This document shows positions 1 to 56,784 of a stretch of 64,000 nt of DNA, piece by piece (position 1 is the first letter of the stretch; every line of letters starts with the position of its first letter). The notes below the pieces were generated by a model. It saw only the letters and a list, made by a program, of their open reading frames with translations. It had not been told where the DNA came from and did no database searches. A program made the translations under genes and the position numbers. This stretch comes from Schmidtea nova (taxonomy: Eukaryota), in contig CM097882.1 of NCBI GenBank assembly GCA_044892505.1, forward strand, positions 240,622,001 to 240,686,000, given 5' to 3'.

Positions 1-19
1 AAAATTTATTAAATAACAA

Positions 20-4672: not shown

Positions 4673-4709
4673 CAAAGTCATTTCTACAAATTTGTCACAA
4701 TTTATAAAA

Positions 4710-5126: not shown

Positions 5127-5191
5127 TTGTTATTTAATAAATTTTACTATGAACAAATTTAGTTTTTTATTTTATTTTGTATTTATTTAAA

Positions 5192-16570: not shown

Positions 16571-17347
16571 ATGGCGTCACCGCACATGTTAGGAGAATTA
16601 AACCTGCAATGCGCAGAAGAAGCCAAATGCTGGCTCCTAGCATTTTCAGCTATATCGAGATGCAACCTGTCAACATCAGAAGACAGTGGCAGAATTTTGA
16701 CAATCAATTTCATGGCCAGATGCGGAATTAAAGCCTTAATGAAAACTCAGACAATTGTGGAACCCGAGAAGATTGAAGAAATGGAATTCGAGAAAATTCA
16801 CAAAGCCCTGTTGCAGTATCTTGAACCAAAAAGAAGACTGGTTATTGTGGAGAGAACAAAGTTCTATATGACAAAGCAAATAGCCAACGAATCAATAGCC
16901 GATTTTGTCACAAGACTAAAGACAAGGGCACGATTCTGTGAATTCGAGCAGTTAAAGAATGTAATCGACCCTACAGAGGAGATGTTAAAAATAGCAGTAT
17001 TGACAGGAATTCGGGACAAAGCAACACAAGAGAAGGTTCTCATACAATGTCAGGACAATTGCAAATCAATTCACGAGATCCAGAACATTATTCAGAACAT
17101 AGAACAAATACAATTATTCATCAAAGGCGAAGAAAACATCACAGAAAATGTAGGAGATAAAGAATTCGAGATAAACTTTTCAAAGCAAAAGTCAACCATG
17201 AAACTGTTACAAACTCCAAATTTTGCCGATCGAATCACAAGAAAAGACAATGTCCAGCATTCAACAAAGAATGCAAACTATGTGGGAAAAGAAACCATCT
17301 GGCAAAAGTGTGCCGATCGACCCAGCTCTCAAAAGAAACTAAGGTAA
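16571..17347 (+). CDS. gag: Gypsy gag
   Basis: YLEPKR..IVERTKFY..KQ..NESIADFVTRLK..ARFCEF retrotransposon gag motif; starts 1 nt after the 5' LTR. Confidence 0.85.
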   Translation: MASPHMLGELNLQCAEEAKCWLLAFSAISRCNLSTSEDSGRILTINFMARCGIKALMKTQTIVEPEKIEEMEFEKIHKALLQYLEPKRRLVIVERTKFYMTKQIANESIADFVTRLKTRARFCEFEQLKNVIDPTEEMLKIAVLTGIRDKATQEKVLIQCQDNCKSIHEIQNIIQNIEQIQLFIKGEENITENVGDKEFEINFSKQKSTMKLLQTPNFADRITRKDNVQHSTKNANYVGKETIWQKCADRPSSQKKLR

Positions 17348-18159
17348 TGAATTATATATCTGAGAACGAGGAGGAGTATGGCATATATCATGTCGAGACT
17401 GTAAAGCAAGTTGGGGATAATATAGAGACGTACACAATCAAGTCAGTACCGGTAAAAATGCAATTAAACACAGGAGCCACTGTATCAATAATATCGACAT
17501 CAATATGGGAGTACTTAGGCAAACCCAAACTAAAGAAAACAACGAAGACTCTAGAAGCATATGACGGTCATTTACTGAAATCAACCGGTAAGTTCAACAC
17601 TACCATCGAAACGAAATCAAAAATATATCCGATCGAGTTAATAGTAGTATAATCTACGAAAGAATTTGGCCTGTTGGGCCAGGACATTATTTCGATCTTA
17701 AATGAAATGGAATTATCAATAAATCAAATCTCAAATGAAAAACACCCATCCGAAATTCTCCCGCCGATAAAAGGAATAAAAGCGTCAATGACACTAATCG
17801 AGAACTCGAAAGACGTATTTTGTCGAGCACGCCCGATACTCTTAGCATTAGAAAGCAAGGTGAACGATGAACTAACCCGATTAGAGAAGATAGGAATAAT
17901 CAGTCCATGCACAACCCCGGTTACGAATGCCTCGCCGGTGATTTGGAAAAAGAAGAGAAATAGGGAGTTAAGAATGTGTGTAGACTTCAAGGTGCATGTA
18001 AATGAGAGAATCAAAATGGATGCCTACCCTCTCTCGAATATTGAGACCATCTTCGCCAAATTAAAGAATGCCAAGGTCTTTGCAAAGTTAGATTTAACTT
18101 CAGCTTACTGGCAAATCGAGCTAGACGAACAAGCAAAGAAATTGGATTTGAGAAGGAGA
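17308..18159 (+). pseudogene. pol: Gypsy protease and N-terminal RT fragment
   Basis: MQLNTGATVSII (catalytic D to N), ASPVIW..LRMCVDFK, KVFAKLDLTSAYWQIEL; truncated at the PPT. Confidence 0.88.
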
Positions 18160-19089
18160 TGTTATATATATATATATATATATTAAATCAATCTTTAATT
18201 TAAAGTTGTTTTAATAACTAAAATTTTATGTTTAATAAATATTTGAATTTAACTAGTTTCTAGTATTCAGTACTTCAGAACAGTACTTTTAAAGAAAATA
18301 AGATCAATAATATTTAAAAGAAAGAAAAATAAAATTTTTTAAAGCATTAAAGCTTTGACAATAAGGTTAGTAAACATTATACTTGAAAATCTCTAATATT
18401 TTGTAATTGAACAAGTTGGAGGACAGTAGAAATAAGTTGTTAGAAAGTGAAGAGATGTTTTACAAATTCTGTAACTATATGTGACAATGGTTTGTATTTC
18501 AATTGAAATCTAACTAATTGCTAATTCATGAAAGTAAAATGATTTTAAAAGGGTCGTTTGAATTATATTTTAATACTTTATAATTAAAGTTTATTATTAA
18601 ATAATTAATAAAAAGCAAATTAAACATTCTCAGAAAAGTCTTATTAGGTGAAAATCCTTGATTATATAAATAATCCTTATTAATCTTTTATTGTTTTTTT
18701 ATTAGTTATTTAATTATTGCTGCTACCAAGAAACCACTATTTTATAGTTTAAAAAATAATTAGAATAAAATCATAAAATATGTGTGAATAATTATTAACC
18801 GTCAAATAATCTTTTCTTTTAGAATTCAAATATTATCTAACACCGGGGTAACACTAAAATGGTTTCTGGAGGATTTAAAATCGAGCAATGACACCTGTGA
18901 AATTGGCTTATCGGAATCTTTATCAATTGGTTACAACAATTCAGCTGGCACATTTATTGTTACACTGATTATTTATGCAATTGGATGCAGTTTGATAGCT
19001 TTAGAACATTTTATTATATATTTAATAAAAATAAATTTCATTAAAAATTTTTAAACGAGTAGTTATTTTTAAATGCTAATTATTTTAAC

Positions 19090-19169
<80 letters not shown>

Positions 19170-19224
19170 TATTTTTATAAGTAATTATTATTATTATTTT
19201 TATAAGTTATTTTTAACTTGCATA

Positions 19225-19520
19225 TTTTTAACATGTCTTTGTTAAGTAGCAGCTGCATTGCAATGTCTTTATTTTAATTGTACAAAGGGGAAAATAATTT
19301 GCTGAAGGCATGTGCATCATACTTGTAATTACCTTGTAATTACTTGTAATTACATATACATATATATGTGTGTATTATATAGTTTTAAAAAATTTTGACC
19401 TTGGAGGGTATATTAATCATACTTGACTCGCAATTATTTTTTGAATGATGTATATATTATAAGGTTTTAAAATATTGAACCTTGGACCCTGGGAGGGTAT
19501 GACTATGATACTTGCCTTTA
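19225..19520 (+). mobile_element. Degenerate relic of Polinton TIR sequence (third copy)
   Basis: tgtctttgttaagt..ctgcattgcaatgtc matches 41465-41500; ggagggtatgactatgatacttg and gaatgatgtatatattataaggttt match the TIR minisatellite at 41660-41800. Confidence 0.7.
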
Positions 19521-19603
19521 GTTTGATATATTTCTAAATTAATTTGTGTTTTAATAATTATTTATTTGCCACTTTTTATAAAATGTTAATTAAATAAATT
19601 TAT

Positions 19604-20966
19604 GATGGAATTGAAGAATTTTAAAGCCGATTTTGATTTAATTGGCAAACACGTCGAAAATCGGAATGTCAGTACAGTTTTGAAATCAACAAAGTCGTTA
19701 ATGGAATACCTACCATAATCACACTGAACATCTGACGATATGATGGATGAGGATTAAAAGAAGCAGAAGAATGGATTAGTGGCATAGAATAATGACTGTT
19801 GACAAATGAACAGCGATTGACAAGCACCTTCGATGTGTTATTAGTGATAGAGACTAAGACATTGTGGGGTAATTTCAGAGAAACAGAAACAACAGATGTG
19901 AAAACAAAAACTTGGTTCTTAAATACATTCACAATTACGAAATAAATAACTGACAAAATCAAAGAATTAGCCGCTTTAGAACAGGAAGATGATGAACGTT
20001 TTGCAGTTTTTGAAATACGACTAAGGAAAGCTTTAGCTGACGTTATAAATTTAGGACAACCAGAAGAAAATATAATTCAAGATCTTATCGCAAATATAGC
20101 ACGCGATGCGAGACTGCGGAAGATATTATTGACAAACCAGAAACAGTATTTGAAGAAACGAGATCATTTGGCGTAGATTTCTGAGAGTAACAAAAATGGA
20201 AGCAATAACACAGGATTTATTAAAACAATCGGTCAAAGAACATTTGCTACCATGACTAAAAAAGGGCAGTTGAGAAGCCAACAGAATACTTAAGATACGA
20301 AGAGCCATTTAGTCATCAAAAATCAAGAAGAGACAAACATTCTATACGCGAATCAATAAATTACTAAGAAAATAACTGCGGTCGGCCAGAACAATTCCCA
20401 AGAGAACAATTTTTGAGAAACTCAAGAATGTCAGATGGCTTAGAAAGGAAACTGTCGACAATTTCCATGAAAAAACTTTCAAAAAAACTCGATAATGAAA
20501 GTAGAAGACTACCAAAAGTAACAGTAAGTGATTGTTTTTGCAGTGGTAAAAAGGGATACAGAAGATATGAGTGCCCACGGGGAAATAAGTGCCTGATATG
20601 TGGCAAAGGGGAACAGGAAAAGTCATAAAGACCCCGATGAGCTACTAGGGGAAATATTTAGAAGAATTCAAAAAAGCAGGATTTAAGATAAATCCAGAAA
20701 AATTGAATTCAATAAAACAGAAATGTGTTTCTTTAACAGTTTAAAAAAGGGTATCCTGACAAACAGGAAGAAAGTTGAAGAAATAGAGAAAGCAGAAATA
20801 TCAAAATGTTCGAAGCAATTAAGATCGTTTCTCGGATTAATGAACTACTTAAGAATATTCTTTAATGACTATGTCAGAATCGTAGAACCATTATATGCCA
20901 CAACATCTGAATGCGATAAAGATATAATTTGGACTAAAAAAAGTTCTTCGAAATCTTTACATGCTT
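19604..20966 (+). mobile_element. Decayed Gypsy gag (CCHC knuckles) and RT C-terminal fragment
   Basis: CFCSGKKGY..ECP..KCLICGK zinc-knuckle relic; KINPEK..F and KQLRSFLGLMNYLRIF..Y..IVEPLY RT thumb motif. The 5' flank recurs at about 45450-45540. Confidence 0.8.
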
Positions 20967-21440
20967 AAAAACTATTAATATTCAACTAATTACTCATTGG
21001 CTTTTTCTAATATATCAAAATATTTGTATTTTAAAAAACTTTGATTTCGAAGAACTTTCTACAATTGAATCTACTTAAGAAATAATGATCGTTTTTAACC
21101 ATTTTACAGTCATTTAACCCATTTTACAAACATTTACCATATTTTGCAATATTTTAACCCATTTTTGTATCATCAAGAAGTACTTAAAATCATTGATTAA
21201 TAAATTATTGATAATTAAATACCGATATTGTCAATAATTTTAAAAGTTTGTACTAAATTTAGTCTGAAAATAATAATTATACTCTGTAAAATTGATTATT
21301 ATTTAAGGGAAATGATAGAAAATTTACATGTTCTTGAATACCATAATTGTATGATGCAAGCAATACAAGTGCATGACTCATGTAGTACTTACATAACACG
21401 GCATATACAGTGCAACTATTTCACACAAGCGTAATAAGCA

Positions 21441-21533
21441 TTGGTCGCTTGATTGGTGTGAGAGGTGGTGGGGCGAGCCTGGAACCTGAAGCCGTTAGAC
21501 GGTCTTATCGAAATCTATAAAAAATCTTATATG
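21441..21533 (+). other. Upstream module plus spliced-leader copy A (SL 21491-21533)
   Basis: GCCGTTAGACGGTCTTATCGAAATCTATAAAAAATCTTATATG matches the planarian SL as recalled; not followed by GT; preceded by ttggtcgc..gtgagag..gtggggcgagcctggaacctgaa. Confidence 0.85.
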
Positions 21534-21888
21534 GCAACTTTAGTGGAAATAAGGTAAAAATATAATAGCCACCAAAATAAAACTCCAGAAGAAGTGATTG
21601 AAATCTTAGAGAATAAACAAAATGAAAACCAAACTAAATGTCTGCTACAAGAATAAAGCTGGTATTCAGAAAATGCTTGTGCCTGAAAATAATTCCTCCG
21701 CCGTGCTTGTTGATGAAAAGAAAAGCTTAAATCTAATTAAAAGTCTAAATGCAGAAATCACTGACTACAAAGTGAAAATTGATGATCTTGATGATGAAAT
21801 TTTGGTTTTGAAACAATTTGAAAATGTTCAAACTCAAGATCCAGAAGCAACCCAAAAAGAAGCTTTATTACAAAATTTTGAAAATTGA
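21531..21888 (+). pseudogene. Unidentified SL-initiated processed mRNA fragment
   Basis: Frame opens at the SL ATG (MATLVEIR*...) and is interrupted by stops and frameshifts; coiled-coil-like translation; not identified. Confidence 0.45.
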
Positions 21889-23932
21889 TTAGAAATTGAA
21901 AACTCTGTACGCAATGGCGCCGAAAAGCTTTTACAACTCCACAAAGGCAAACCGCATCGCGTCTGTGTGCGCGACACAAATGTTGGTGTTGTAGTCGGTA
22001 TGCGCAAACAGACGCGAGGATCTTCGAATCGCTGTTGAAAGAAATAACTTTGGAGTTAAAAATAAATCGAATTATTGGATTTATTAAAAACATTTTCTTT
22101 AGCAGTTGTTTTGCTTGGCTGAATTTTTAAATTGGTTTTTGTTGCGGAGTTTTTTAAAATTAAAATTTATATTTAAAAAAGGGCTTTGGGACAGTCACTT
22201 GTTTATCTGTGCTTATTTGGGATTATTGGTTTTGTGTTTTTTAAGGATAATAAAATTATAAAGTCATTTTTAAATTTTGTAAACTGCGTAATTCACCATA
22301 ATGAATGAAATGCTAATTCACACGAGCAACATTATCAACTGGAAAAGCATTAAAATTAATCCACATTTAACATCGACAGATTAAATATTGAAATGCAGTA
22401 TTCAAGTTTTGAAATATTTTCAAGTGGAATGCAACAATCACAAGGATTTGATTCTGGGCGATAGATCGGATTTGAGAGTAATCGTGAAACTATTTCTCAT
22501 TAACAACCATTACGAAGACATTCTGAAGCATTTATCACAAATATTTAAATATTTGGAATGCAATGAATTGGATTCGTTGATTATTTCTATCGCTCCTGAA
22601 ACTATACGCTCTTCAATTTGTATACATGATGTATATTAGATCATATCAACCAAGCATCATTGTGATTTAATTCAACAATTCAGACTTGAAATTTGATGAG
22701 TAACACAATAGTTTAACCCTAATAGCAGAAAATTTGTAGCAGAACATTGATAGCAGAACATCTTTTGTGATGGTTTTTATCTACAAAAGCTTTATATTGT
22801 ATTTAACTATACTACAAGTGCATGCCCTATGCGTAACACACATAACATGAATCGTTCACTCACAGGTCATTTTATCTACTTTGTTTTAAAATAAACCCAT
22901 CATTATAGCAATGTTTTATTGATTTATGTAATTTTTGTCATTATTTTGATCAATCACATAAATTTTACAGTCTTATTGTGTTAAAAATTGATTTTATTTA
23001 CATAAATTTAAAAATTAATTAATTTTACTTAGACAAGAATGTAAAATCATTAAATTTTACACTCGTATCTAACTTAAGTAATATGTATTTAATTAGTTTT
23101 ACAAAAGAATCTATATTAATCTCTTTAAACCTTTAAATAATCATTAAAATTAATATCAAACAAACATACATTTATTTTCGATAAATTAAATTTACAATAG
23201 CATAAATGCTACAGAATTCAATTTTTATCTTCGATATATTTTTAATCTTCTTTGGTTTTACTAATAGTCCTACTATTTTTAACCAATTCTATAAGTTTTC
23301 GCCACTGTCCATTTTCTGGAACCCAGGGGAATATTTCACTTTGGATAATCTAAAATAATAATAATAATAATAAAAATAATGATATATTTAAAAAATAATA
23401 TAACTGTACTGACCACTGAAAATAATTTTCATAATTTGAACCTGAATTATTCATTATTTGTTTTATATACATAACGCCACAATGACATGTGACCACTTCA
23501 TTTCAGACTCAAATAACGAGTAAAACACGCTTTTGAATGCATATTTCTTGCTTGTAGCCTATTTCTGATTCAAAATCCATGAATAGTCGATAGAATTGAA
23601 ATGATATATTTTCTCGGTATCAGACACCAAAATTTGTAAATTTGTTATGACTTTAACATCATTGTCATCTTTTTCTTTTGATAAGAGACTATCAATAAAA
23701 TTTAAAATAAATATTTCTTGATTCATTTCATTAATAAGAGTAAATTTTCAAGTGTTTAAACAAATTTATTCAAGATTTGTATGTGTATTACTCATGAATT
23801 ACAACTTGATTGCATCTCAATTGTAATTTGATTGCATCTCAAGAGCATGGACAACAAATATATTGTAATACAACTCTAAGTCATACAACTACATGTAAAA
23901 AATGTTATTTGAGTAGGCAGTTATGTGCCCTC

Positions 23933-24193
23933 TGACTCATCGTTAAACAAAGACAATGACGTCATCGATGACTCATAACAAAGAACATGAGTCACTCCTA
24001 CCCCCCCACTCCCGCCCATATGACTCATCGATGACTCATCGATGACTCATCAGTATGCCTCATCGATGACTCATCGGTATGCCTCATCGATGACTCATCA
24101 GTATGACTCATCGATGACTCACCAGTATGACTCATCGATGACTCACCGATGACTCATTTCAAATTTGAATTTTATGACGTCATCGATGACTCA
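23933..24193. promoter_or_regulatory. Subterminal array of AP-1-type (TGACTCA) and CRE-type (TGACGTCA) motifs
   Basis: 14 TGACTCA/TGAGTCA heptamers and 2 TGACGTCA octamers counted in about 260 bp. Regulatory function is inferred. Confidence 0.55.
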
Positions 24194-24995
24194 TTTCAAA
24201 TTTTAAATTTGAATTTCCAAAGGTTAAATAAGGTCAAACCGTCAAACAAGGGTATCATTCGAAAGGTCTTTGAGAGGTCTATACAATGGTCATACCCTCG
24301 AAGGTTTATGGAGGGCCATGAACCTTCAAAGGGTCCAAAACCTTCAAATCTTTTTAAACCTTATAATATAGATATCATTCGAAAGGTAATTGAGAGGTAA
24401 GTATGATAGTCATACCCTCGAAGGTCTATTGTGTATGCTCAACCTTCAAGAGTCTTAAACCTTCAAAAATTTTCAAACCTTATAATATACATATCATTCA
24501 AAAGGACTTTTGAAGGTGAGTTCGAAGGTCATACCCTTGAAAGTTCCAAGGTTCAAAAATTTGAAAACCTTATAATATGTATAATATGTATGGTGTGTGT
24601 ATGTAAAATTTATCAATCACTATTTTATAAAATTTCGTACCTAAATTTAAACAAGGACATTGCAATGCAGATTCAACTTAACAAAGACATTGCAAAGTAA
24701 ATGCAACGAGACAAAGACTAATGAAATATAACTTTTAATAAAATTTTTGTACACGGATATCTTGCGTGTGTGTGTGTTTGAGACAAATAAAAGTACGCAT
24801 TGAACGCGCGTTTCACGCGCGTTCTTCTTCCCTTGTTGTTTAAGACAAATAACAGTATGCAATGAGCGCGCGTGGAACGCGCGTTCTTCTGCCCTTGTTG
24901 TTTAAGACAAATAACAAAATTTATGAAAATTCCAACAATCAAAAACTAAAATTTAAATTAATAACATTTATTAAATAACATTTGTAAAATAACAT

Positions 24996-25412
24996 TTATG
25001 CATATCGTGCACTGTCAATTCTCCAAATTGGAGTTATAACATCTTTTGTATCGATTTTATATCCCTGAATGATTATGGTAATAAACCAATTTTCTTGATC
25101 CTTGTATTCGATCGATTGGAAAGCATCATGGAAACGGGTTTTTCGGTTGTTGATCCATATAGTTTCCTTGCAACTTAAATTGTTATTGATTTTGAATAAA
25201 ATTTTATTTAGTGCAACAACATCTTCTTTACTTAGATTTGCAGCTAAACTGTCATACAATGACTTTGTTAATTTCACTGGATATGACAAACGAAACGGTA
25301 TTTCTTGTACCAAGAAATAAATTTTGTAATCGTTATACATTTGTACTGGTTTGACTTCATTATTGATTTTTCTTTCTTCACTAATGTCATAAGTTGATTT
25401 ACGTGCTGGCAT
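24996..25412 (-). CDS. TIR-encoded 138-aa accessory protein
   Basis: Open frame, homologous to 4710-5126; mirror at 40743-41159. Confidence 0.8.
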   Translation of the reverse strand: MPARKSTYDISEERKINNEVKPVQMYNDYKIYFLVQEIPFRLSYPVKLTKSLYDSLAANLSKEDVVALNKILFKINNNLSCKETIWINNRKTRFHDAFQSIEYKDQENWFITIIIQGYKIDTKDVITPIWRIDSARYA

Positions 25413-26015
25413 TTTATAAATTGTGACAACATCTTAAAAAATGTCTTTGTATTTATAGTCACGGATGTATGTCTTTGTCCAATCAGAATCATGCATTTGT
25501 ATTGCACACGTTATGCATGTCTTTGTCACGTGTCTTTGTAACATGTTTTGCTGCATGTATGTAATTGATGCATGTGTGTTTTTAATATTTATTTGTTTAA
25601 TAAATTCATTTTCAAATTATACCTTTAATAAAAATATCTTATTAAAAACAACTATTTAACTAATTAAAACCTTTTAGAGTCAATCTATAATAACCTATTA
25701 AAACATAAATAACACTTTAACTAATAAAAAGAATGTTTAAAGTAAATTTATAATTACTTATTTAAAAACTAAATAACACCTTAATACTCAGCATAACATC
25801 TTTTTAATAAACTTTATTTAGTTATAAAAATTGTTATTAAACTTATATCCCTTGTTAATAATAAAAGTCAAATAAAAAACTAAAAAAAATGACTACTACT
25901 TAAAAACTAATAAAAACTAAAACTAAAAACTAAAATATTTATTAAAATGAGAAATCTAAAAATTACATGAAACTAAAAATGACTGGTTACAAATAAAAAA
26001 CACACACATAAAATG

Positions 26016-26540
26016 TTATTGATTTTCTTGTTGTTCATCAGGAACTCTGTGACATTCGTCACAATCTGGAGATTGCGGCGATTCATCGCATACAATCATT
26101 GAAGTAGTCAGCTCGGGTGTTGAATTGGGCCAAGTTTCTTTCATATCTTCATCTTCCTCCTCAATTGTTTCGAGTTGCGAATCGAATTCTTTGAGGGCGT
26201 TTCGTAGAACCCAAATAAAAAATCGGCGGATCCTCTCAACGCAATTTCCGCATTGATATGCGCAGAGGATATGTTCCGATACGTGGGGCAAATCGTTGTG
26301 GATATTTGCCAGATGGTCCAAAACGATTTGATTGACATCTATGCCAGTCATGATCTGGATCTTGTACGGCAGAATTTCTGGTGCCGTATATGCCAGGGTA
26401 GGCATTAGTTTCGGGAACATTTCTTCTAACTTGGCCAAGACCACGTTCATCAGTTTTCCTGAAAAAATAAATAATATTAAAATTGAAAAAGATTAATTAA
26501 AATCTTTACCATTTTTAATCATAGTTTTTTGTAAGCACAT
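26016..26540 (-). CDS. Two-exon Cys/His acidic-tail accessory gene (intron 26459-26509)
   Basis: Homologue of 3656-4225 with a conserved 51-bp GT-AG intron; MCLQKTMIKN-G-KLMNVV. Confidence 0.75.
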
Positions 26541-26722
26541 GCTGTTTTATAATTCTAAATTATGATTGAATGTTCTTAGTATATATACGATAGAAACACA
26601 CATCATGTACGAAATGAACAACTTTAAACCAATAAGAATCAAGCAGGCAAAACATGTCTTTATTCTATCGATACACACTCGACCAATCAGAATCGTGCAT
26701 TTCCATTGCATCAATATTGCAG

Positions 26723-27189
26723 TCATGAGTCACATGTTAGTATGAAATCAACAAAGGCTTTATCTTCTATAATTGATTTTATATCATTAATAATATTATC
26801 AACTATATTAGCATAGTCTTTGTTTTTTAATCCTAATATGACTACTTTACCACTAGCAAAAATATTGACACACATTGGATTATATTTTGTATATCTTAAA
26901 GCTGGAAATAATTCTGGTTCATAAACACATGGAATCAATTTAGATAACTCATTTAAATTACAAATAAATCTTAAATCTGCAATCACAGTTATCGATTGTA
27001 TTGTTAAATCGTGAAACTTTACTTTTTCATCGCTAATAAATTCCTTGCATCCCATTATTCTATATCTGCCTGCCTTAAAGTATATTATCGGATACTTTCC
27101 ACTTCTATCTACAATTTGCTGTGGTTTCCCAGTTGGAAATATCATATGTGACACATCTGTCTTACCTTGTAATTAATGTTTCTAATCAT
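26723..27189 (-). pseudogene. TBP-like gene, 1-nt deletion near codon 8
   Basis: About 97% identical in nucleotides to 3012-3479; aagggtaag became aaggtaag; the downstream frame is open. Confidence 0.8.
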
Positions 27190-27279
27190 TAATAAAAATA
27201 TTTTTAAATGTAACAACAAAGAGATAATTAATATTTTAATCAATATAAACAATAATAATACTAATAAATAATTACAAAC

Positions 27280-28934
27280 ATGGAATTAAGAAATGATGCA
27301 GTTTACTAAATTGTCGGCCCGAGCGGGAGCGGAAAAACTTTGTTTGTTTGTAAATTATTACAATCTAAATTATTCAAATCAAAGTTTAATAAAATTTATT
27401 GGCATAGGGGCGCTGATGATGAACATGGAATGACTCAAGATCAGTTTTGTAAAATAAAAATGACAATCATAAAAGGTTTCGATAAAAACTGGTCATCTAG
27501 ATTAAGAGAAGGGGATGTGATTATTATTGACGACTTGTATCAAGAAGCAAATAAAGAAAAGGATTTCAATAATTTATTTACGAAAATCGCTAGACACAAG
27601 GGTGTTACAGTTATTTTTATTACTCAGAATTTATTTCATCAGGGCGGTAGTCATCGAATTCGCAATTTAAATGTTCAATATCTTGTTGTTTTTAAAAATC
27701 CTCGAGATGCAACAGTTATTGATTTTCTGGCAAGACAAGCATACCCCTCTAATCAGAATTTCTTAATTGATGCGTTTCAGGATGCTACAAAAGCTCCTCA
27801 TGGATATCTTTTCCTTGATTTCACACAACAATGCAGGGTGGCCGGACAAAATGTCCGCGGACAAAATGTCACGGACAAAATGTCACGGACAAAATGTCAT
27901 GAGGACAAAATGGCACGGGACAAAATTTCCGCGGACAAAATGTCACGGACAAAATGGCACGGACAAAATGTCACGGACTCACAGACAAAAAATTGCGGAA
28001 AAAAATATAAGACAGAAAAACAATGAAAATATTTCAATAATGCATTTATCAAATTTAGTCTAACTTTATTATAATAATTATATGGCACGGACAAAATGTC
28101 CGCGGAAAAAAATCGCGGGAAAAAAACACAGACAAAAAAAATGTGCAGTTAAAATGTAACCATTATTATTCGCCCGGCCGGCTAGTAAAACTTGAACCAA
28201 GCCAGGTTCCAACCAAAGACATTGACTGGGAGACGTCACTGCTTCTTATTTCCGTGTCAACTTAAAATTACTCAACTCTGCAATCTGGTGACAGATTTCT
28301 TGAACGCATTGGCATAAAATTTCTATAACAACGGCTGGGAGGAAAAAGAAAACATACATCCGCGTCAACGAGGCATTGCATGCCATGGTGACCGACTACA
28401 ACAACCGAGATCCAATCACATATTTAGGAGACATTGCACGTGTTTTAAACATTAATGTTGTTTGACTTCATTAGTTATTTTCATTGATAAAAGACTCGAT
28501 TATTTATTTATGTTATTATTATGTTATAAGACTAAGCTATTTTATTAACTGAATATCTAACACTAAATTAATATAGGCTAGATATAATTATTATAATAAA
28601 GTTAGACTAAATTTGATAAATGCATTATTGAAATATTTTCATTGTTTTTCTGTCTTATATTTTTTTCCGCAATTTTTTGTCTGTGAGTCCGTGACATTTT
28701 GTCCGTGCCATTTTGTCCCGTGCCATTTTGTCCTCATGACATTTTGTCCGTGACATTTTGTCCGCGGACATTTTGTCCCGTGCCATTTTGTCCTCATGAC
28801 ATTTTGTCCGTGACATTTTGTCCGTGACATTTTGTCCGCGGACATTTTGTCCTAGCACCCAATGCAGTGATGATTTAAGAGTTAGAACTGATATTTTCAA
28901 CAAGGAAGGAGCCATGGTTTATAAACAAAGTTAA
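27280..28934 (+). pseudogene. Packaging ATPase, disrupted by a TAA at 27307 and by an insertion at 27836-28860
   Basis: Colinear with the intact copy 2299-2922; the empty-site sequence acaacAATGCAgtgat is restored when the insertion is removed. Confidence 0.92.
27836..28860. mobile_element. Non-autonomous foldback-type DNA transposon, 1,025 bp
   Basis: GGGTG..CACCC ends, TIRs 27836-28083 and 28582-28860 built from GGACAAAATGTC repeats, 6-bp TSD AATGCA. Confidence 0.9.
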
Positions 28935-28954
28935 ATATATTTACAGTAGTAATC

Positions 28955-29468
28955 ATGTTAATGAAATCTAGAGTAAAGTTTGAGCGCTTGATAAAGGCTA
29001 GAAAAACAATGAAGAAAACAAAGAAAACAAAGAAATCAGTTCCGAAACCTGTTTCTAAAACTAGTTATACTCCTTCGAAAAAACTAATTATGGATAATTT
29101 TCCCAAACAAAATAAAATTCCCCCTATTTTGAAATCTAATCCTAAACAAATATATCATCGGAGTTTTCCGTTTTTTAATGCATTGCTTAAATCACCCAGT
29201 GTTAGAAGAATGGGTATTCTTCAATCGTTTCCTAATTACGTTATTGATGATTTACTCGCTATTTTAATTAGAGTCGTTAGAGGTAAAATGAATCTAACTC
29301 CATCTAATCATCGTGTTTTGAACAAGCACAAAAAACCATTGTTATCACTTGTCAAAACTTATGCGTAAAATAATATATAAACAACAAGGAGGGTTTATTG
29401 CCGCATTGTTACCCCTAGCTTTATCATTATTAGGTGGTGCTGGTTTATTGGGAAAAAGAAAGTCATAA
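28955..29468 (+). pseudogene. pX-like core protein gene with a 14-bp frameshifting deletion
   Basis: Versus copy 1, aaaac[aaaaaataaaaaac]ttatg is deleted near 29357; the QQGGF tail is still present out of frame. Confidence 0.8.
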
Positions 29469-29523
29469 ACAATGGGTCAATCATTACCTAATTTAAATTT
29501 AAACTTTAAATCTTTTTGTTGTA

Positions 29524-31583: not shown

Positions 31584-31956
31584 TCCCGATATAGTTTCTT
31601 TGTACAGTAATAGCCAAACTGGTGGCGAATTACCGTATTTTGTAGGTAAACAGTATGGATCAGGTTGGTTGAAAACTATTGGTAGATTTGCACTTCCAAT
31701 ACTTAAGCGATTAGGTAGTTTTGGATTCAATACTGCCAAGGATGTTATCATGAAGGATAATAAAATATTACCATCATTGAAAACAAATGCTTTAGCCGCA
31801 GTTAACAAAGCAATACCTGCTGTAACACAAATGCTTCCTTCAATTACAAATATGTTTACAAAGAGTGAACCGGAACCTGTACCAGTAGGACCAAGACGTA
31901 AACGAAGACGTATAAACAAACGAATGAAAGGGCATGGAACTATATTTGAAGAATGA
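31576..31956 (+). CDS. Small basic Polinton core-type protein, 126 aa
   Basis: QTGGELPYFVG..QYGSGW....RFALPILK motif typical of Polinton core ORFs; Arg/Lys-rich C-terminus. Confidence 0.7.
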   Translation: MSNPDIVSLYSNSQTGGELPYFVGKQYGSGWLKTIGRFALPILKRLGSFGFNTAKDVIMKDNKILPSLKTNALAAVNKAIPAVTQMLPSITNMFTKSEPEPVPVGPRRKRRRINKRMKGHGTIFEE

Positions 31957-33170: not shown

Positions 33171-33235
33171 GCAGTATTGGTTTGAGCAGAGCTCAAACAG
33201 TATAAATAACCAAAGTTATTATTATTATTATTATT

Positions 33236-33612: not shown

Positions 33613-33645
33613 ACAATTTAGTTAAATAAATGTTATTGTAAAAAA

Positions 33646-51435: not shown

Positions 51436-51582
51436 TTGGTCGCGCCCGCTCTTAAAATATTTTTAAAATTACTTAAATAATAATTAAAATAATTAATTGG
51501 GTGTTTGATCGCTGTGAGAGATTGTGGGGCGAGCCTGGAAGCCGTTAGACGGTCTTATCGAAATCTATATAAATCTTAGATG
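51436..51582 (+). other. Upstream module plus spliced-leader copy B (SL 51541-51582)
   Basis: GCCGTTAGACGGTCTTATCGAAATCTATATAAATCTTAGATG; the 105-nt upstream segment is shared with 53647-53760. Confidence 0.88.
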
Positions 51583-52375
51583 TCGGAAGATTCCAAATCA
51601 AATGACAGTGGTAAAACTCCACTTCAGACAGTGTTTATAAACGGTAACAAAATCAGCACATTAATTCCAAATCGAATATTTGTCGGGGGATTTCCACAGA
51701 ATACTACAGAAGAAGAATTGGAAAGTTTTTTCTATAAGTATGGAGAAATAAAGGATGTTAAAATTATCCCTGATAAGCTGGACAAGCTAAAGGAAGTTAT
51801 GGTTTTGTAACATTTGCCAGCCAAGAAGTTGCAGAAAGAATTATTACCGAACAGGCTGAAACATTAGTACCAGATCGAAAGTTGAACATTGGTAGAGCTG
51901 TAAAAAAGCAACCGTTGACTGGTAAATCTGAACTACAAAACACTTTGATATTAAATAAATTGCCACTTTCGTATGGATCAGTTTATCTATATCAAGATTA
52001 TTCTTATCTTTTCAATCAAGATTTGAATGCATTATATCAAAACTATTCAAATCAATTATCTCAAATAAAGTTTCTACCCGCTTATGCATCTTCATTATTG
52101 TCTCCATTTGTTGGAAATCATGTAACCCTGGGTCTTTCCATAAATCCTTATCAACAATTACAATCCTTATTACCATTGTCAATGACAGCACCTCAAAGTA
52201 ATTCACCATTTCACTCGAATCAACCACTTAATTAAATGAGCAATTATCAAAAAGTCAGCCTGCTTCTGTGGAAGCAAATATTTCAACTGATACCAGCAGA
52301 GACATTGAAACTACAACCATTTCCAGCAATTTTCAGAGCTATGATAATAATTATTCTCAAACAAAACTTCATTGT
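51580..52375 (+). pseudogene. boule: Processed boule (DAZ family RRM) retrocopy, frameshifted in RNP1
   Basis: IPNRIFVGGF..TTE.EL..FF..YGEIKDVKII.D; shifted frame KGSYGFVTF..A..RKLNIGRAVKKQ; ATG supplied by the SL; intronless. Confidence 0.85.
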
Positions 52376-52960
52376 AAATTGATTAAAAAGGAATCTTGGA
52401 ATTTAATCGATTGGAATTTTTTGAGGTTTATTTAAAAACATTAACTTGATTGATTTTGTGATTTGGTTTATTTTTTGGATTTAAGTTTTGTTTATTGGGA
52501 TTAATGGTAATTTTTTTTGACTTAAAAACGATTGGTTTAACTGGGTAACTTTAATGCAATTAACTTAGGGTGATTTTGAACTTTTGGAATTTAATTTTGA
52601 GGAATTATTAAAAAACTTAGTTTTAGATTTGTTTGTGTTATCGGATGAATTGATGAATTTTTGGCAGAATTAATTTTTAATTTGTAATTAACTATTGGTG
52701 GAATTTTGGATTTTGTTTATCTGCGTCAATGAATTGGATTGTAATGTTTTTTATTGAATTAACTTTTGAATTTAATTAAGGATTTAACTTTGAATTATTT
52801 TTGCTGAATTATTTTTGGATTTACGAATTTTGGGGGTCAATGAATTGAATTTGGGAATTAACTTTTGAATTTATTATGTTTAATTGCTGATGCTGAATTG
52901 GACTTTTGAATTGGATTTTGAATAAAATGTTTCGATTTCGATTTTTTTGATGAATTTAAA
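52376..52960 (+). repeat. Strand-biased T/G-rich low-complexity tract
   Basis: Very low C content (ttggattt, ttgaatt units); similar tracts at 22060-22300, 54170-54400 and 55540-55830. Confidence 0.7.
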
Positions 52961-53646
52961 TTTGGATTAATTTCGACTTGGCATTTAAAGCGATGGCGTT
53001 GAATGGATTACTTTCTGTGGATGTTCGAGATAATAATTGTGGCGTAGTTGCTTCACAAAGAGAAGTTCCAGGTAAAATGAACAAACAGAGTTCTGCTACA
53101 AGATTATTTAACATAACTGAAAGTACCGATTGCGTTAGGACCGGAATGATTCCTGATTGCAGATCGCAAGTATGCCGTGCACAAATGAAAGCTGCACGAT
53201 GTGAATGCAAATTTCATCATAAACTGTCCTGTGAAAGGATTTGTTGATGTATTGCCGATATTAATCAATCGTACACTCAATCAGCCTCAATGATCGCATT
53301 ATTATATGATGACTCATCATTGATGACGAAAGCAATAGGAGCTGGATGCGCCAAACCAACTTTAATATTAACAATATTTTGGCACAGCCTTTATCAAGTG
53401 TGTATTGATGAAGGCTGTCCCTAAATATTGTATACTTATTTAAAATAAATTTTGATCCATAGTCATCCATTATGGGAATTATTGATATTAATACTTTTAA
53501 TTCAAATAAAATTTTATTTTATATAATCAACTATTTTATTTTACTGATTATTTAATTAATTATCGGGGATATATGAACAATAATTTACATTACAGTGGTT
53601 ATAATTTGTGTAAATAAGGGAGAGCTAACACTTCATTTTATTATAT

Positions 53647-53802
53647 TTGGTCGCACCCGCTTTGTAAAAATATTTTTAAAATTAATTAAATAAAAGTTAA
53701 ATGGTAAAAAGCGGGGCTGGATTGCTGTGAGAGATTGTGGGGCGAGCCTGGAAATCTGAAGCCGGTAAACGGTCTTATCGAAATCTATATAAATCATATA
53801 TG
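53647..53802 (+). other. Upstream module plus spliced-leader copy C (SL 53761-53802)
   Basis: GCCGGTAAACGGTCTTATCGAAATCTATATAAATCATATATG (3 substitutions from the recalled SL1); module ttggtcgcacccgct..gctgtgagagattgtggggcgagcctggaaatctgaa. Confidence 0.85.
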
Positions 53803-54069
53803 ATATGGCCTGTGTACCACAACATGGGCGGTGCAATTGCCATTCATTCTGCTGTTGAATCTGTGATTACTTCACTAGTCGGATTAGTTGTAATTAATGT
53901 TGTTGAACGATCGGCACTCGGCGCATTATACAGTATGAATAATTATCTTCACAGCAGACCATGTGTTTTCAAATCACTATTTCATCAGTATTCCAACTCT
54001 CGGACTATATACTTAATCGATTCACCGATTCCTTTAAGTGCTCATCAATCGTCTCCTGATTTGTATTAA
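53800..54069 (+). pseudogene. PPME1: Protein phosphatase methylesterase 1 internal fragment, in frame with the SL ATG
   Basis: HNMGGAIAIH..SLVGLVVINVVE.SAL.AL.SM..YL.SRP..FKSL matches PME-1 HSMGGAIAVH..L.GL.VIDVVEGTA..AL.SMQ.FL..RP..FKSL. Confidence 0.8.
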
Positions 54070-54433
54070 AATTTCAACAGTGCGCCACAACCCTACAGTA
54101 ACCAGTGAAGATATCAAAACTTATTCTATTTGTGTGTAACATAAATATCCTATTAGTGACAATTCAATTGCTGATTTTTAGGAACTGAATTTGTGATTAA
54201 TTTAGAATTTTAAATTTTAAAAAATTATTGGAATGAAATTGTAAATTTGGTAAATTAGATAATTTTGTAAATGGTTTAAATTTGGCTTAGTAATTTTTAA
54301 TTTTTGATTAGGATTTGGAATTTTAAAAGGTGATTAATAATATTTGTGTAATTATTGGATTACTTGTATTTGATGGAAATATATATTTATTCAAAGCGTT
54401 GCAAAGACTTCTTGAAAACTTGATAATATAAAA

Positions 54434-54937
54434 TCGGATGCTAATATTTTATTGGATCAAATGCGACTGAATGCTCAACGTCATTTGCTAACCTTGCAAG
54501 AACCAATTCCAGTTGATCAATTGGTAACGCAGATTTGTGATTTATTGCACGCCTACACAATGTATGGTGGCCGACGGCCTTATGGAGTCTCTATGCTCTT
54601 TATTGGATGGGATAAAGAATACGGCTATCAGTTGTTCCAGTTAGATCCATCTGGTAATTTTGTCGGGTGGAAGGCCACTTGTATTGGTTTGAATTCGGCT
54701 GCGGCTTCCTCCATGCTAGAACAGGAATACGAGAAACTTGACGTGGAAAGCGGCTTAAAGCTCTGTGTTAAAATTCTTTATAAATCGATGACAATATCAG
54801 AACTAACTGCAGAAAAGATTGAATTGGCAGTAATGAAACGCAAGGATGATAAAACTTATGTCAAACTAATTGATCAAACTAAAATTGAGGCTTTGATCAA
54901 AGAAGTGGAACAAATTGATTTAAAGGAAAAGCAGAAA
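54434..54937 (+). pseudogene. PSMA4: Proteasome subunit alpha type-4 (alpha3) 3' two-thirds, intronless
   Basis: SDANIL..MRL.AQR.L..LQEPIP..QLV..ICD..AYT.YGGRRPYGVS.L..GWD..YGYQL.Q.DPSGN..GWKATCIG.NS.AA.SML. Confidence 0.9.
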
Positions 54938-55000
54938 GGAAACGGTTATTTGCCACTGAGAGGTGACGTTCCAGAGATGACAGCTGACCCTGAACGCTAT
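54938..55000 (+). pseudogene. NAE1: Short NEDD8-activating enzyme regulatory subunit fragment fused in frame to PSMA4
   Basis: GNGYLPLRGDVPEMTADPERY resembles NAE1 G.LPVRGTIPDMIADS.KY; short match. Confidence 0.6.
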
Positions 55001-56784
55001 GAAAGGATTGAGAAAATCAATCGCACCTGGCCGAAGTCAACCAATAAAAATTGATGTGGTTTCTTTTCGTAACATTTGTTATTTGCACTTCTGATTAATG
55101 GTGTTAAGATGGACTCACCTTTAGCTTCTACATTCATTTCTGTTTCTATGTAAAATTTAAAAAGTGAATAAACCTTTATTACACAAACGTTATTTAGATG
55201 ATATATTTCTTATATTTAACAATAAAAAACACTCTGGGTTTTTTTTGTGTTATATAAATAATTTCCAGAGTCATAACATTTACTATTAAAGTTGAAAAAA
55301 AAGAAAAACAAACAATTTAGAACCGACTAGGTAAACTTTAAATACTGGCCTGTATACAAATTTTATGATTTTAATCATAAGAAATATTATAAGCGATTGG
55401 TTTATTACCGCTAATTTACCGCCAATTTACTGTAGATCTATAAATAATTTTGATTATTTTATTTAAGTTAGTGCAGAATAACGGATATTCAAAATCTTCT
55501 CGAATGATGTGTGAAGCTATTGATATGTGTATCTGGTTAATCCTGGCTCGGATTATGAGATTCGCGTGGTTGATTGTGCGTTAATGTTTTTGATTAGTCG
55601 AATTAGTTTTTTCAATTTTTATTATCAATCCAATTGGAGCTTTTCTTTTTGTGTGTGTAATTTGATTATGATGGTGTGTGTCCTATAATGGTTTTTGTGT
55701 GAGTAATAAGATTATTATGGTGTGTCTATTAATGGTTTTTGTTAGAATTGGTTTATTTTAAAAATTTGGATTGAAATAATAAAGCTTTTTTCAATTCTGA
55801 ATTCGACTAATTTTAAATTGACTGCAAATAAATCTGACGTAACGTATGAAAATGAGATTAACAATGTATATTTAACCGATTTTTTGGTAAGAAATCAATG
55901 AAAATCTTAATGGTTGGTTTAATGAATCGACATTGCAAATAATTTTAGGGGTAATTGTCGATTCATTTATTTTAATTTTTGTCTCGTAAAAATTAATAAA
56001 TAAATTGAATAATACTTTGCGGTATTCCAGTGGTCGAAGTTGCAGTTGCGACTGTATAAAATGACTGGTTTGATCATACAAATGATCATACATTTCTGAT
56101 TGTTGGATATAATTATCCTGATATCCAATTTGAGATGAATGTTCATTCCTTGCATTGTTGGGTAGAATATCCTATAACAATCGCATGGTTTGATTTAGTG
56201 TTTAATTATATGAGTTTACCAGCCATATTATTAAAATGTAAAAACTAATTGATTTGCTAATAAATAGATTACAAATAAAAGACAAATTTTATTTTAAACT
56301 TCAAACTTTTTTTTCTTTTTAAAACAACTTGTCATACTTTTTATAAATCATACTTTTAATAAAAAATACTTTTTAATAATAAAAATAAGTAATAGTTCAT
56401 AACAAAATGTTGAATTTTTTGACGGAGACACGAAGATTGAAATAATAAATAGATTTTTCACATTGAGATTACCTAATTTTCTTCAAGAATTTATTAATAT
56501 GAAAATATCATTCTTGGTCTATGTTTTACAATCTCTTGTTATTTATCGCTCTTTGATTGAATGGAACTGAAAGGGGAGGCTAATTGGATGGATTAGACAA
56601 TTCATAATCAATAAAGTTCGATTTCGAAATTATTAGAAAACTTCAGCGATTTGTTGCCATGGTTATTATTGACAAATTTAAATGGGTGCTGAGTATCAGT
56701 AGACGTTGTAAAAAAATCAATATTTTTGAAAAGTATTTTCAATACAAGAATATAAGTAACAGCTGTGAGAGAAGGAATGATTAG

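What the first reader, a model, noticed from the sequence alone, without database searches (positions are those of the whole stretch)
21441..21533. Spliced leaders in genomic DNA, each preceded by the same non-mRNA upstream module and fused directly to host mRNA sequence
Seen: three SL copies (21491, 51541, 53761). None is followed by the GT donor of an SL RNA gene; each continues from its terminal ATG into coding sequence (unidentified, boule, PME-1). All share the upstream block gtgagag..gtggggcgagcctggaa(tctgaa) abutting the SL, and a farther ttggtcgc(g/a)cccgct..aaaatatttttaaaatta block (at -105 and -114; internally deleted in copy A). Known: the flatworm SL ends in AUG and is added by trans-splicing, so an SL-mRNA junction in DNA implies reverse transcription. 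Ordinary retrocopies should have unrelated sequence 5' of the SL. Inference: either cDNAs recombine into SL RNA genes through the leader and acquire the SL-gene promoter, or a mobile element carrying an SL-gene-derived donor trans-splices onto host pre-mRNAs and retrotransposes the product. Either would be a trans-splicing-driven gene-capture system that I do not know to be described.
Basis: partly seen in the sequence, partly recalled or inferred. Interest (0 to 1): 0.92.

Follow-up and report, generated by a model that had tools for sequence, protein, structure and literature searches.

The report
Spliced-leader retrocopies sharing one upstream module
Three decayed, reverse-transcribed pieces of flatworm mRNAs still carry their spliced leader, and all three are joined to the same short upstream sequence, which shows the leader was fused to a pre-existing module before or during copying; the module's source could not be settled from this window.

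Summary
Three copies of a 42-43 nt flatworm-type spliced leader (SL) lie at 21491, 51541 and 53761, all on the + strand. None is followed by a GT donor. Each runs from its terminal ATG into a different coding-like sequence. Each is preceded by the same module, which starts abruptly at TTGGTCGC, with unrelated DNA upstream.

New findings:
- The loci are dead mosaics of intronless, partial host-gene pieces: an RRM protein, PME-1 from about residue 150, and proteasome alpha-4-like and another alpha-type piece. They are interleaved with C-poor T/G-rich spacers and, in copy A, with a motif of a repeat family (X).
- No target-site duplication was found, and only one A-rich tract.
- The 6-7 nt between module and SL in copies A and C share CTGAA, so module-SL is a native contiguous unit rather than three fresh junctions.
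- The window holds no intact SL RNA gene, and the three loci share no 3' flank.

Best reading (confidence about 0.45): these are chimeric retrocopies made by a template-switching reverse transcriptase. SL-bearing mRNAs were joined through the leader to an RNA that carries module-SL at its 5' end. That RNA is either a retroelement leader that had acquired an SL or an upstream-initiated SL RNA.

In-situ recombination into SL RNA genes remains possible, but I could not obtain a genuine SL RNA gene to test it. Novelty: a new variant of a known kind.

The parts
21441..21490 (+). Copy A module: TTGGTCGC head, interior of about 61 nt missing relative to copy B, proximal block, then CCTGAA
21491..21533 (+). 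Copy A spliced leader (43 nt, ends ATG; next bases GCAACT, no GT donor)
21534..21956 (+). Copy A first coding-like piece; unidentified, open frames broken several times
   Evidence: no Pfam match
21957..22290 (+). Copy A: repeat family X motif GCGTCTGTGTGCGC (once forward, once inverted) followed by a T/G-rich spacer
22291..22640 (+). Copy A second coding-like piece (weak Clathrin/VPS-region match, E 0.046)
51436..51540 (+). Copy B module (105 nt): distal block, AT-rich variable middle, proximal block abutting the SL
51541..51582 (+). Copy B spliced leader (42 nt; next bases TCGGAA)
51583..52390 (+). Copy B: processed pseudogene of a single-RRM protein (DAZ/boule-like is plausible). It reads on in frame from the SL ATG, and the reading frame changes at least twice
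   Evidence: Pfam RRM_1 2e-10; PDB matches; ORFs
52391..52984 (+). C-poor T/G-rich spacer (about A 0.29, C 0.05, G 0.19, T 0.48)
52985..53330 (+). Proteasome alpha-subunit fragment (profile positions 10-82 and beyond), lacking its 5' end, decayed
   Evidence: Pfam Proteasome 8e-9
53647..53760 (+). Copy C module (114 nt), ending with ATCTGAA before the SL
53761..53802 (+). Copy C spliced leader (42 nt; next bases ATATGG)
53803..54168 (+). Copy C: internal piece of protein phosphatase methylesterase-1 (human residues about 150-235 of 386; the catalytic-motif serine is replaced), cut short at both ends of the gene, followed by about 100 nt unassigned
   Evidence: PDB 3c5v/3c5w/7soy, E 6e-13 to 2e-12; closest relative P0056, 78% identity
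54169..54394 (+). C-poor T/G-rich spacer
54395..55315 (+). Proteasome alpha-4-like processed fragment (from about residue 55 to the stop at 55054), its 3' UTR, and the only A-rich tract of the mosaics (55295-55315)
   Evidence: Pfam Proteasome 6e-34; 77% identity to P0001; an intron in the relative's gene is absent here; A-tract

Best explanation
The three loci are dead chimeric retrocopies. A pre-existing unit, made of the module plus a spliced leader and with a fixed 5' end at TTGGTCGC, is joined exactly at the leader's terminal ATG to a processed piece of a host mRNA. Further processed mRNA pieces and spacer sequences follow. I think a reverse transcriptase that switches templates several times made these mosaics, as in retroposition mediated by LTR retroelements. 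The module-SL unit is most likely the 5' end of an RNA. That RNA is either a retroelement leader that had itself picked up an SL, or an SL RNA transcript that starts about 105 nt upstream of the normal start. SL-bearing host mRNAs would have been joined to it through the 42 nt they share, either by copy-choice within the leader during reverse transcription or by trans-splicing from the extended donor.

Shown: the anatomy, the processed and decayed state of the pieces, the fixed 5' end, the inherited module-SL junction, and the lack of an SL RNA gene or a shared 3' flank.

Inferred: that the module is transcribed, which enzyme acted, and how the join was made.
For: 1. The SL is joined to coding sequence with no GT donor, three times with three different partners.
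2. The pieces are processed and partial. An intron in a relative's alpha-4 proteasome gene is absent in the window copy. PME-1 starts at about residue 150 and stops near 235 of 386. Proteasome and RRM pieces are truncated and broken.
3. Several unrelated genes lie in one locus without target-site duplications and with a single A-rich tract. These are the features listed for template-switch, LTR-mediated retroposition (PMC5131818).
4. Retroelement material lies in and beside the mosaics. An RT-bearing element is upstream of copy A on the same strand (RVT_1). The motif GCGTCTGTGTGCGC lies inside copy A, upstream of an EF2 pseudogene, and about 450 nt upstream of a gag-like region.
5. Homology among the three loci begins at the same nucleotide with unrelated DNA before it. 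This is the mark of an RNA 5' end or an element terminus rather than of a fading promoter.
6. CCTGAA (A) and ATCTGAA (C) share CTGAA, so the module-SL junction was inherited from a source family.
7. B and C differ strongly in the middle of the module (21/34) but not in the flanking blocks (41/48 and 28/28). They therefore come from different members of a constrained source family.
8. In parasitic flatworms, partial SL copies tied to LTR and LINE elements have been reported and ascribed to trans-spliced retrotransposon transcripts (PMC12582326).
Against: - No element body, LTR, or copy of the form module-SL-retroelement gene was seen.
- The module has no significant similarity to repeat family X or to any other sequence in the window.
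- It matches no Rfam family, and its predicted folds are no better than shuffles (z -0.3 to -1.2).
- A start with TGG plus a G+C-rich run looks like a primer-binding site, but no tRNA could be matched, and there is no LTR before it.
- The genuine SL RNA gene flank of this species could not be obtained, so the simplest rival is untested.
- Microsimilarity at the junctions could not be examined without the parent genes.
- There are only three copies, and two are neighbours.
Confidence: 0.45

Rival explanations
1. In-situ recombination with SL RNA genes. The module is the native promoter flank of SL RNA genes. cDNAs of trans-spliced mRNAs recombined with such genes through the 42-nt leader, or were copied in during break repair, and replaced the intron half of the gene. 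The three loci would then be former SL RNA genes.
For: The module shows two conserved blocks separated by a variable AT-rich stretch, a pattern expected for promoter elements of a gene family. B and C lie 2.2 kb apart on the same strand, and A is also on the + strand. Flatworm SL RNA genes often sit in same-strand clusters less than 5 kb apart (PMC12582326). The module-SL junction is native. Capture of several cDNA pieces at one break would also give mosaics without target-site duplications.
Against: The window has no intact SL RNA gene. No remnant of a shared intron half or 3' flank lies after the mosaics. Similarity stops at the same nucleotide in all three loci instead of fading. The best-conserved block abuts the SL, and its distance to the SL start varies by 0, 6 or 7 nt, which is odd for an element that sets a start site. 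Three genes would all have to be hit within 64 kb.
Confidence: 0.2
2. End-to-end template jump onto a discrete module-SL RNA. A roughly 150-nt RNA made of module plus SL, ending at the leader's ATG, served as the last template when a reverse transcriptase ran off a host mRNA. The host mRNAs need not have been trans-spliced. Known analogues are U6-mRNA chimeric retrogenes in mammals and the WEIRD-RNA chimeras of Magnaporthe.
For: The module has a fixed 5' end and the SL a fixed 3' end. In copy C the SL is joined inside the PME-1 coding sequence. In the one PME-1 gene with introns that I could read, the exon boundary lies about 22 codons upstream of that point. An A-rich tract at the 3' end of the B-C mosaic fits priming on a poly(A) tail. 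There is a precedent for multi-jump chimeras (PMC2104539).
Against: No known RNA has this form. There is no Rfam match and no better-than-chance fold of module plus SL. In copies B and C the SL ATG is in frame with the coding sequence that follows, and in B the join lies about 30 codons before the RRM, where an N-terminus is expected. No target-site duplication was found.
Confidence: 0.15
3. One ancestral module-SL insertion was later duplicated locally, and its downstream part was replaced by rearrangement.
For: All three copies lie within 33 kb on one strand, and B and C are adjacent.
Against: The middle of the module is only 21/34 identical between B and C while the flanking blocks are near-identical, and copy A has a large internal deletion. 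The flanks are unrelated on both sides up to the very ends of the unit. It would take three exact replacements at the ATG.
Confidence: 0.08
4. Assembly artefact or cDNA contamination.
For: The window has six N gaps and is rich in repeats.
Against: The pieces carry frameshifts, stops and substitutions typical of old genomic pseudogenes. The three modules differ by indels. None of the junctions is next to an N gap.
Confidence: 0.03

Closest known systems
LTR-retrotransposon-mediated retroposition by template switching (Tan et al. 2016, PMC5131818; Ty1 in yeast, Bs1 in maize)
   Same: Partial mRNA copies; several parental genes fused in one locus; no target-site duplications and little or no poly(A); extra bases at some junctions; retroelement sequence in and around the chimeras; identical switch points among related copies.
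   Different: No LTRs or complete flanking element were identified here. The recurrent join is to a module-SL unit rather than to retroelement coding sequence. The same switch point is used with three different host genes.
Retrogenes with spliced-leader relics in dinoflagellates (PMC6050394, PMC5585692, PMC12014239)
   Same: A DNA-encoded SL at the 5' end of an intronless gene copy proves that a trans-spliced mRNA was reverse transcribed and re-integrated.
   Different: In dinoflagellates the sequence 5' of the relic SL is local DNA, or further relic SLs from repeated recycling. It is not one shared non-mRNA module.
Partial SL copies associated with LTR and LINE elements in parasitic flatworms (PMC12582326)
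   Same: Same phylum. SL sequence in DNA without the rest of an SL RNA gene, linked to retroelements and ascribed to trans-spliced retroelement transcripts.
   Different: Those are described as partial leaders inside annotated elements. Here the leader is complete, is preceded by a fixed module and is followed by host gene pieces.
Small-RNA/mRNA chimeric retrogenes made by LINE template jumps (U6-type chimeras in mammals, from my own knowledge; tripartite WEIRD-RNA chimeras in Magnaporthe, PMC2104539)
   Same: A fixed small non-coding unit with a complete 5' end sits 5' of varied mRNA copies, and several jumps are possible.
   Different: The unit here matches no known small RNA. It contains the SL, which is normally found only on mRNAs and SL RNA. 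No target-site duplications were seen.
SL-gene-specific non-LTR retrotransposons (SLACS, CZAR, NeSL-1; from my own knowledge)
   Same: Retroelement activity tied to spliced-leader sequence, with SL-gene promoter and SL sequence lying 5' of inserted material.
   Different: Those elements interrupt the SL exon at a fixed internal position and carry their own RT and endonuclease genes. Here the SL is complete to its ATG, and host mRNA pieces follow it.

Membership tests
SL RNA gene | Leader exon followed at once by a GT splice donor | tested here: not met
   The next bases are GCAACT, TCGGAA and ATATGG.
SL RNA gene | Intron half with an Sm-type site and stem-loops; whole RNA about 90-110 nt | tested here: not met
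   Coding-like sequence follows the leader. There is no Rfam match at gathering or E<=10 thresholds. The three loci share nothing downstream.
SL RNA gene | Upstream flank identical to that of genuine SL RNA genes of the species | not testable with these tools
   The window has no genuine SL RNA gene. The papers with the gene sequences are not held. The genome is absent from the searchable collections.
LINE-type processed pseudogene | Intronless copy of a spliced mRNA | tested here: met
   An intron in a relative's alpha-4 proteasome gene (L006) is absent in the window copy. The RRM and PME-1 pieces are continuous coding stretches.
LINE-type processed pseudogene | 3' poly(A) tail and flanking target-site duplication | tested here: not met
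   There is one A-rich tract (55295-55315) for the whole B-C mosaic and none in A. No convincing direct repeat flanks any unit.
LTR-mediated (template-switch) retroposition chimera | Partial mRNA copies, often from several parental genes in one locus, without LINE hallmarks | tested here: met
   RRM, proteasome alpha and PME-1 pieces lie in 51.4-55.3 kb, and two pieces lie in copy A. Hallmarks are absent.
LTR-mediated (template-switch) retroposition chimera | Flanked by discontinuous parts of an LTR retrotransposon, LTRs included | tested here: inconclusive
   An RT-bearing remnant lies upstream of copy A on the same strand. The X motif lies inside copy A and next to a gag-like region at 62-64 kb, where the DUF1759 match is only E 0.2. 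No LTR pair was identified.
LTR-mediated (template-switch) retroposition chimera | Microsimilarity between partners at the switch points | not testable with these tools
SL-gene-specific non-LTR retrotransposon insertion (SLACS/CZAR/NeSL type) | SL exon interrupted at a fixed internal position by an element with its own RT gene | tested here: not met
   The SL is complete to its ATG in all three copies. What follows are host gene pieces, not RT ORFs.
Small-RNA/mRNA chimeric retrogene (U6 type) | The 5' part is a full-length copy of a known abundant small RNA | tested here: not met
   The 5' end is fixed, but there is no match to any Rfam family and no fold better than shuffles.
SL-relic retrogene (dinoflagellate type) | DNA-encoded SL at the 5' end of an intronless gene copy | tested here: met
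   The shared module 5' of the SL is an extra feature not described for that class.

The most novel reading that the evidence does not exclude
A family of RNAs in this flatworm, either a retroelement or an upstream-extended SL RNA, carries the spliced leader behind a fixed 5' module. It uses the leader as a portal, by copy-choice in the shared 42 nt or by trans-splicing from the extended donor. Any trans-spliced host mRNA could then be attached to the module and written back into the genome, making this a recurrent, leader-guided route of gene-fragment capture and shuffling.
Probability: 0.25. Interest if true: 0.85.

Novelty: new variant of a known kind. Interest (0 to 1): 0.55.

Why it matters
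Spliced-leader relics in DNA are direct proof that mRNAs were reverse transcribed. They have been used in dinoflagellates to trace gene recycling. A shared module in front of the relic would mean the leader does more than mark the event: its 42 nt, common to perhaps a third of all mRNAs, would guide where the cDNA is joined. If the module proves to be the SL RNA gene promoter, such fusions could put an mRNA copy behind a strong small-RNA promoter. If it is a retroelement leader, the leader would be a general recombination handle between host mRNAs and mobile elements. Either way it would add a concrete mechanism to exon shuffling by retroposition in a phylum where the agents of retroposition are not known. 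The three copies seen here are broken and show no sign of present function.

Tried and rejected
- Known RNA families for the module: Rfam gave nothing at gathering or E<=10 thresholds. I checked hammerhead and HDV-like ribozyme layouts by eye; the core motifs are not met.
- Module as a structured RNA: its folds are no better than shuffles.
- Module as the intron half of SL RNA (a circular permutation, or a branch read-through): it is too long, has no clear Sm-type site and no leader upstream. Dropped.
- Module start as a tRNA primer-binding site: it starts with TGG plus a G+C-rich run, but the window has no tRNA and there is no LTR before it. Kept only as a hint.
- More copies from public data:
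  - A metagenome scan with an SL 20-mer gave only bacterial chance matches.
  - IMG/VR scans gave chance matches or nothing.
  - A search with the peptide encoded by module plus SL found nothing.
  - Five exact-protein look-ups failed: four window ORFs and the PME-1 relative P0056. Contigs reached through relatives are from other organisms and lack the SL.
- Target-site duplications: only chance 10-11-mers.
- A shared 3' flank or SL-gene remnant after the mosaics: none.
- T/G-rich spacers as copies of one sequence or as C-to-T hypermutated copies: alignments, with or without C and T merged, score only z 1-4. They share words, not alignable sequence.
- Spacers as the 3' UTRs of the upstream gene pieces: unlikely for copy C, because PME-1 stops mid-gene, and for copy A, because the X motif lies between.
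- SL join in copy C as a conserved exon boundary: not supported by the one intron-bearing PME-1 gene I could read; planarian introns remain unknown.
- Module similarity to repeat family X or to the gag-linked leader at 62 kb: none.
- A 17-nt SL-like match at 10402-10418 (minus strand): chance.

Full report
**Observation.** The window is AT-rich (30% G+C), repeat-rich DNA with six N gaps, which I left untouched.

- A 29-nt core of the reported leader occurs three times, all on the + strand: 21491, 51541 and 53761. None is expected by chance.
- The full leaders are 43, 42 and 42 nt and end in ATG. The next six bases are GCAACT, TCGGAA and ATATGG, so none has a GT donor.
- The 17-mer GTGGGGCGAGCCTGGAA occurs only three times in the window, always just before a leader.
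- The distal block TTGGTCGC(G/A)CCCGCT lies at -105 in copy B and -114 in copy C. Copy A keeps TTGGTCGC at -50 and lacks about 61 nt of the interior.
- Alignment and self-BLAST show that the three loci are alike only from TTGGTCGC to the leader's ATG. Nothing before or after is shared.

The description is therefore correct in every checkable detail.

I could not confirm from a printed source that the 42-mer is the host's leader. The two papers on planarian SL RNAs are not held, and the sequence does not occur in the searchable library. Its build does match published flatworm leaders: a 5' CCGT...ACGG hairpin, about 40 nt, ending in ATG (PMC3795323). From my own knowledge it corresponds to a Schmidtea-type leader.

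**What follows the leaders.**

- *Copy B* reads from the leader's ATG, in frame, into the N-terminal part of a single-RRM protein (Pfam RRM_1, 2e-10).
  - DAZL RRM structures are among the matches (4e-8), but hnRNP and PABP RRMs score as well or better. 'Boule' is plausible but not shown.
  - The frame changes at least twice further on.
- *Copy C* reads in frame into protein phosphatase methylesterase-1, but into its middle.
  - The piece aligns with human residues 153-210 of 386 (E 2e-12). It is 78% identical to a flatworm-like relative, P0056.
  - The serine of the catalytic motif is replaced, and the similarity ends far before the C-terminus.
- *Copy A* runs into a coding-like stretch with several breaks, which I could not identify.

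**The mosaics.** Each leader-linked piece is followed by a C-poor, T/G-rich spacer, with about 5% C and 47% T, and then by a second, unrelated processed gene piece.

- After B comes a proteasome alpha-subunit fragment (Pfam 8e-9).
- After C comes an alpha-4-like proteasome fragment, from about residue 55 to the stop, with its 3' UTR (Pfam 6e-34).
- After A comes a further coding-like piece.
- The alpha-4-like piece is 77% identical to a protein from a related flatworm's genomic contig. That gene has an intron at a site where the window copy is continuous, so the window copy is processed.
- More such pieces lie nearby: an EF2 fragment on the minus strand (GTP_EFTU, 9e-26) and, by eye only, ARF-like and actin-like fragments at 56.8-57.3 kb.
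- No unit has a convincing target-site duplication. The only A-rich tract is at 55295-55315, after the alpha-4-like 3' UTR.

**Retroelement material in and beside the mosaics.**

- A remnant with a reverse-transcriptase domain lies upstream of copy A on the same strand (RVT_1).
- The motif GCGTCTGTGTGCGC occurs eleven times against 0.03 expected:
  - once forward and once inverted inside the copy A mosaic;
  - six times upstream of the T/G-rich spacer that precedes the EF2 fragment;
  - three times about 450 nt upstream of a gag-like region at 62.8-63.8 kb, which is broken and gives only a weak DUF1759 match, E 0.2.
- Two copies of this repeat family, which I call X, begin with TGG(A/T)TAATCCTGGCTC, and the DNA before them is unrelated.

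Partial mRNA copies from several genes fused in one locus, no LINE hallmarks, and retroelement pieces in and around them are the features described for template-switch retroposition by LTR retroelements (PMC5131818).

**The module.** Four observations constrain what it is.

1. All three copies begin at the same nucleotide, with unrelated sequence before it. This is expected for the 5' end of an RNA or the terminus of an element. A promoter whose conservation fades would look different.
2. Between B and C the distal block is 41/48 identical, the proximal block 28/28 and the leader 38/42, but the middle only 21/34. The two copies therefore come from different members of a source family whose outer blocks are constrained.
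3. The bases between module and leader, CCTGAA in A and ATCTGAA in C, share CTGAA. They also resemble the preceding CCTGGAA. Independent untemplated additions would not agree like this. So module and leader were already contiguous in the source, and copy B probably lost the tract by slippage.
4. The module matches no Rfam family, does not fold better than shuffles, and resembles nothing else in the window.

Its start, TGG followed by a G+C-rich run in an AT-rich setting, looks like a primer-binding site. The deletion in copy A removes roughly a predicted hairpin, as a reverse transcriptase skipping a stem would. Both points are hints only.

**Mechanism.** The leader-to-coding joins show reverse transcription, and the mosaics show repeated template switching. 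The native module-leader unit with a fixed 5' end points to a source nucleic acid in which the leader is preceded by the module.

- *Most likely (about 0.45).* That source is an RNA: a retroelement leader that had itself acquired a leader, or an SL RNA transcript initiated about 105 nt upstream. Partial leaders linked to LTR and LINE elements are reported in parasitic flatworms (PMC12582326). Leader-bearing host mRNAs would have been joined to it through the shared 42 nt, by copy-choice during reverse transcription or by trans-splicing from the extended donor.
  - For it: the two-block conservation pattern, and the same-strand, 2.2-kb spacing of B and C, which resembles flatworm SL gene clusters.
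  - Against it: the window has no intact SL RNA gene, the loci share no 3' remnant, the 5' boundary is abrupt, and the distance between the best-conserved block and the leader start varies.
- *Second rival (about 0.15): an end-to-end jump onto a discrete module-leader RNA, so that the host mRNAs need not have been trans-spliced.*
  - For it: in copy C the leader is joined to the middle of PME-1. In the one intron-bearing PME-1 gene I could read (L010), the exon boundary is about 22 codons upstream of that point.
  - Against it: the in-frame ATG in both B and C, and the N-terminal position of the join in B.
  - Internal, low-level trans-splice acceptor sites are also known in flatworms, so the PME-1 join may still be a real trans-splicing product.
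- A single ancestral insertion (0.08) and an artefact (0.03) are unlikely, for the reasons given under the rivals.

**Comparison and novelty.** Leader relics in front of retrogenes are well known in dinoflagellates. Chimeric multi-gene retrocopies are known from LTR-mediated retroposition and from LINE template jumps (PMC2104539). SL-gene-specific retrotransposons are known in trypanosomatids and nematodes (my own knowledge). None of my eight literature searches on leaders, retrocopies, flatworms and retrotransposons turned up a fixed non-mRNA module in front of the relic leader, shared by fusions to different host genes. I rate it a new variant of a known kind. The copies are broken and give no sign of present function. 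Three copies in one window cannot show a genome-wide system.

**Limits.** The genome of this window is not in any collection I could search. The decisive comparison, with genuine SL RNA gene flanks and with further module copies, could therefore not be made.

- No contig that I took for human was fetched, saved or compared. One human protein appeared in a hit list and was not used.
- N stretches were not filled.
- The window holds genes of a large virus-like element and of LTR-type retroelements.

Noticed in passing
43909-44364 (minus), 55534-55810 (+), 21957-22290 (+), 62260-62348 (+): Repeat family 'X'. It starts with TGG(A/T)TAATCCTGGCTC, with unrelated DNA before it in the two copies that have the start. 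Repeats of GCGTCTGTGTGCGC follow (11 hits against 0.03 expected), then GTCGAATT..TTCAATT, then a T/G-rich stretch, after which host gene fragments follow. At 62.3 kb the motif lies about 450 nt upstream of a gag-like region. The copy at 55.5 kb looks like a CpG-depleted version.
   Followed up: partly
52391-52984, 54169-54394, 22040-22290, 55627-55807 (+); 43909-44107 (minus): C-poor (1-6% C), T/G-rich spacers. Words such as GAATTT, TTGGAT and GGAATT are enriched 12-14 fold. The spacers cannot be aligned to one another, and each is followed by a host gene fragment lacking its 5' end. Their origin is unexplained; a retroelement leader, UTR-like sequence or a decayed simple repeat are possibilities.
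   Followed up: partly
43286-43870 (minus); 56780-57260 (+): Further processed gene fragments without a leader: elongation factor 2 (GTP_EFTU, 9e-26) and, by eye only, an ARF-like GTPase piece followed by an actin-like piece.
   Followed up: partly
about 24000-42050 and 1-6850: Genes of a large virus-like mobile element in two copies or parts: a Pox_A32-like packaging ATPase (E 1.5e-6), an 839-aa ORF that looks polymerase-like by eye (no Pfam polymerase match), an integrase-like ORF (by eye), a TBP-domain ORF (6e-15) and several ORFs without matches. Arrays of 120-bp tandem repeats lie at 6329-6847, 24209-24545 and 41612-41962. The element separates the copy A mosaic from the EF2 mosaic. I did not reconstruct it or analyse it further.
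   Followed up: no
16571-21000 (+): Decayed LTR-type retroelement remnant: a gag-like ORF, a reverse-transcriptase domain (RVT_1, 1e-5) and a second RT-thumb-like stretch. It is broken by several stops and frameshifts and ends about 450 nt before the copy A module.
   Followed up: partly
50890-50960 with 51300-51345; 53371-53431 and 7719-7790: Short inverted-repeat, MITE-like elements. One pair lies just upstream of the copy B module. A palindromic 60-nt element between the B and C units recurs at 7.7 kb next to an N gap.
   Followed up: no
L006 (Logan SRR33002330 contig), 886-1060: In a related flatworm's proteasome alpha-4 gene, the sequence after the stop codon is also T/G-rich. C-poor, T/G-rich 3' regions may therefore be a general trait of these genomes.
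   Followed up: no
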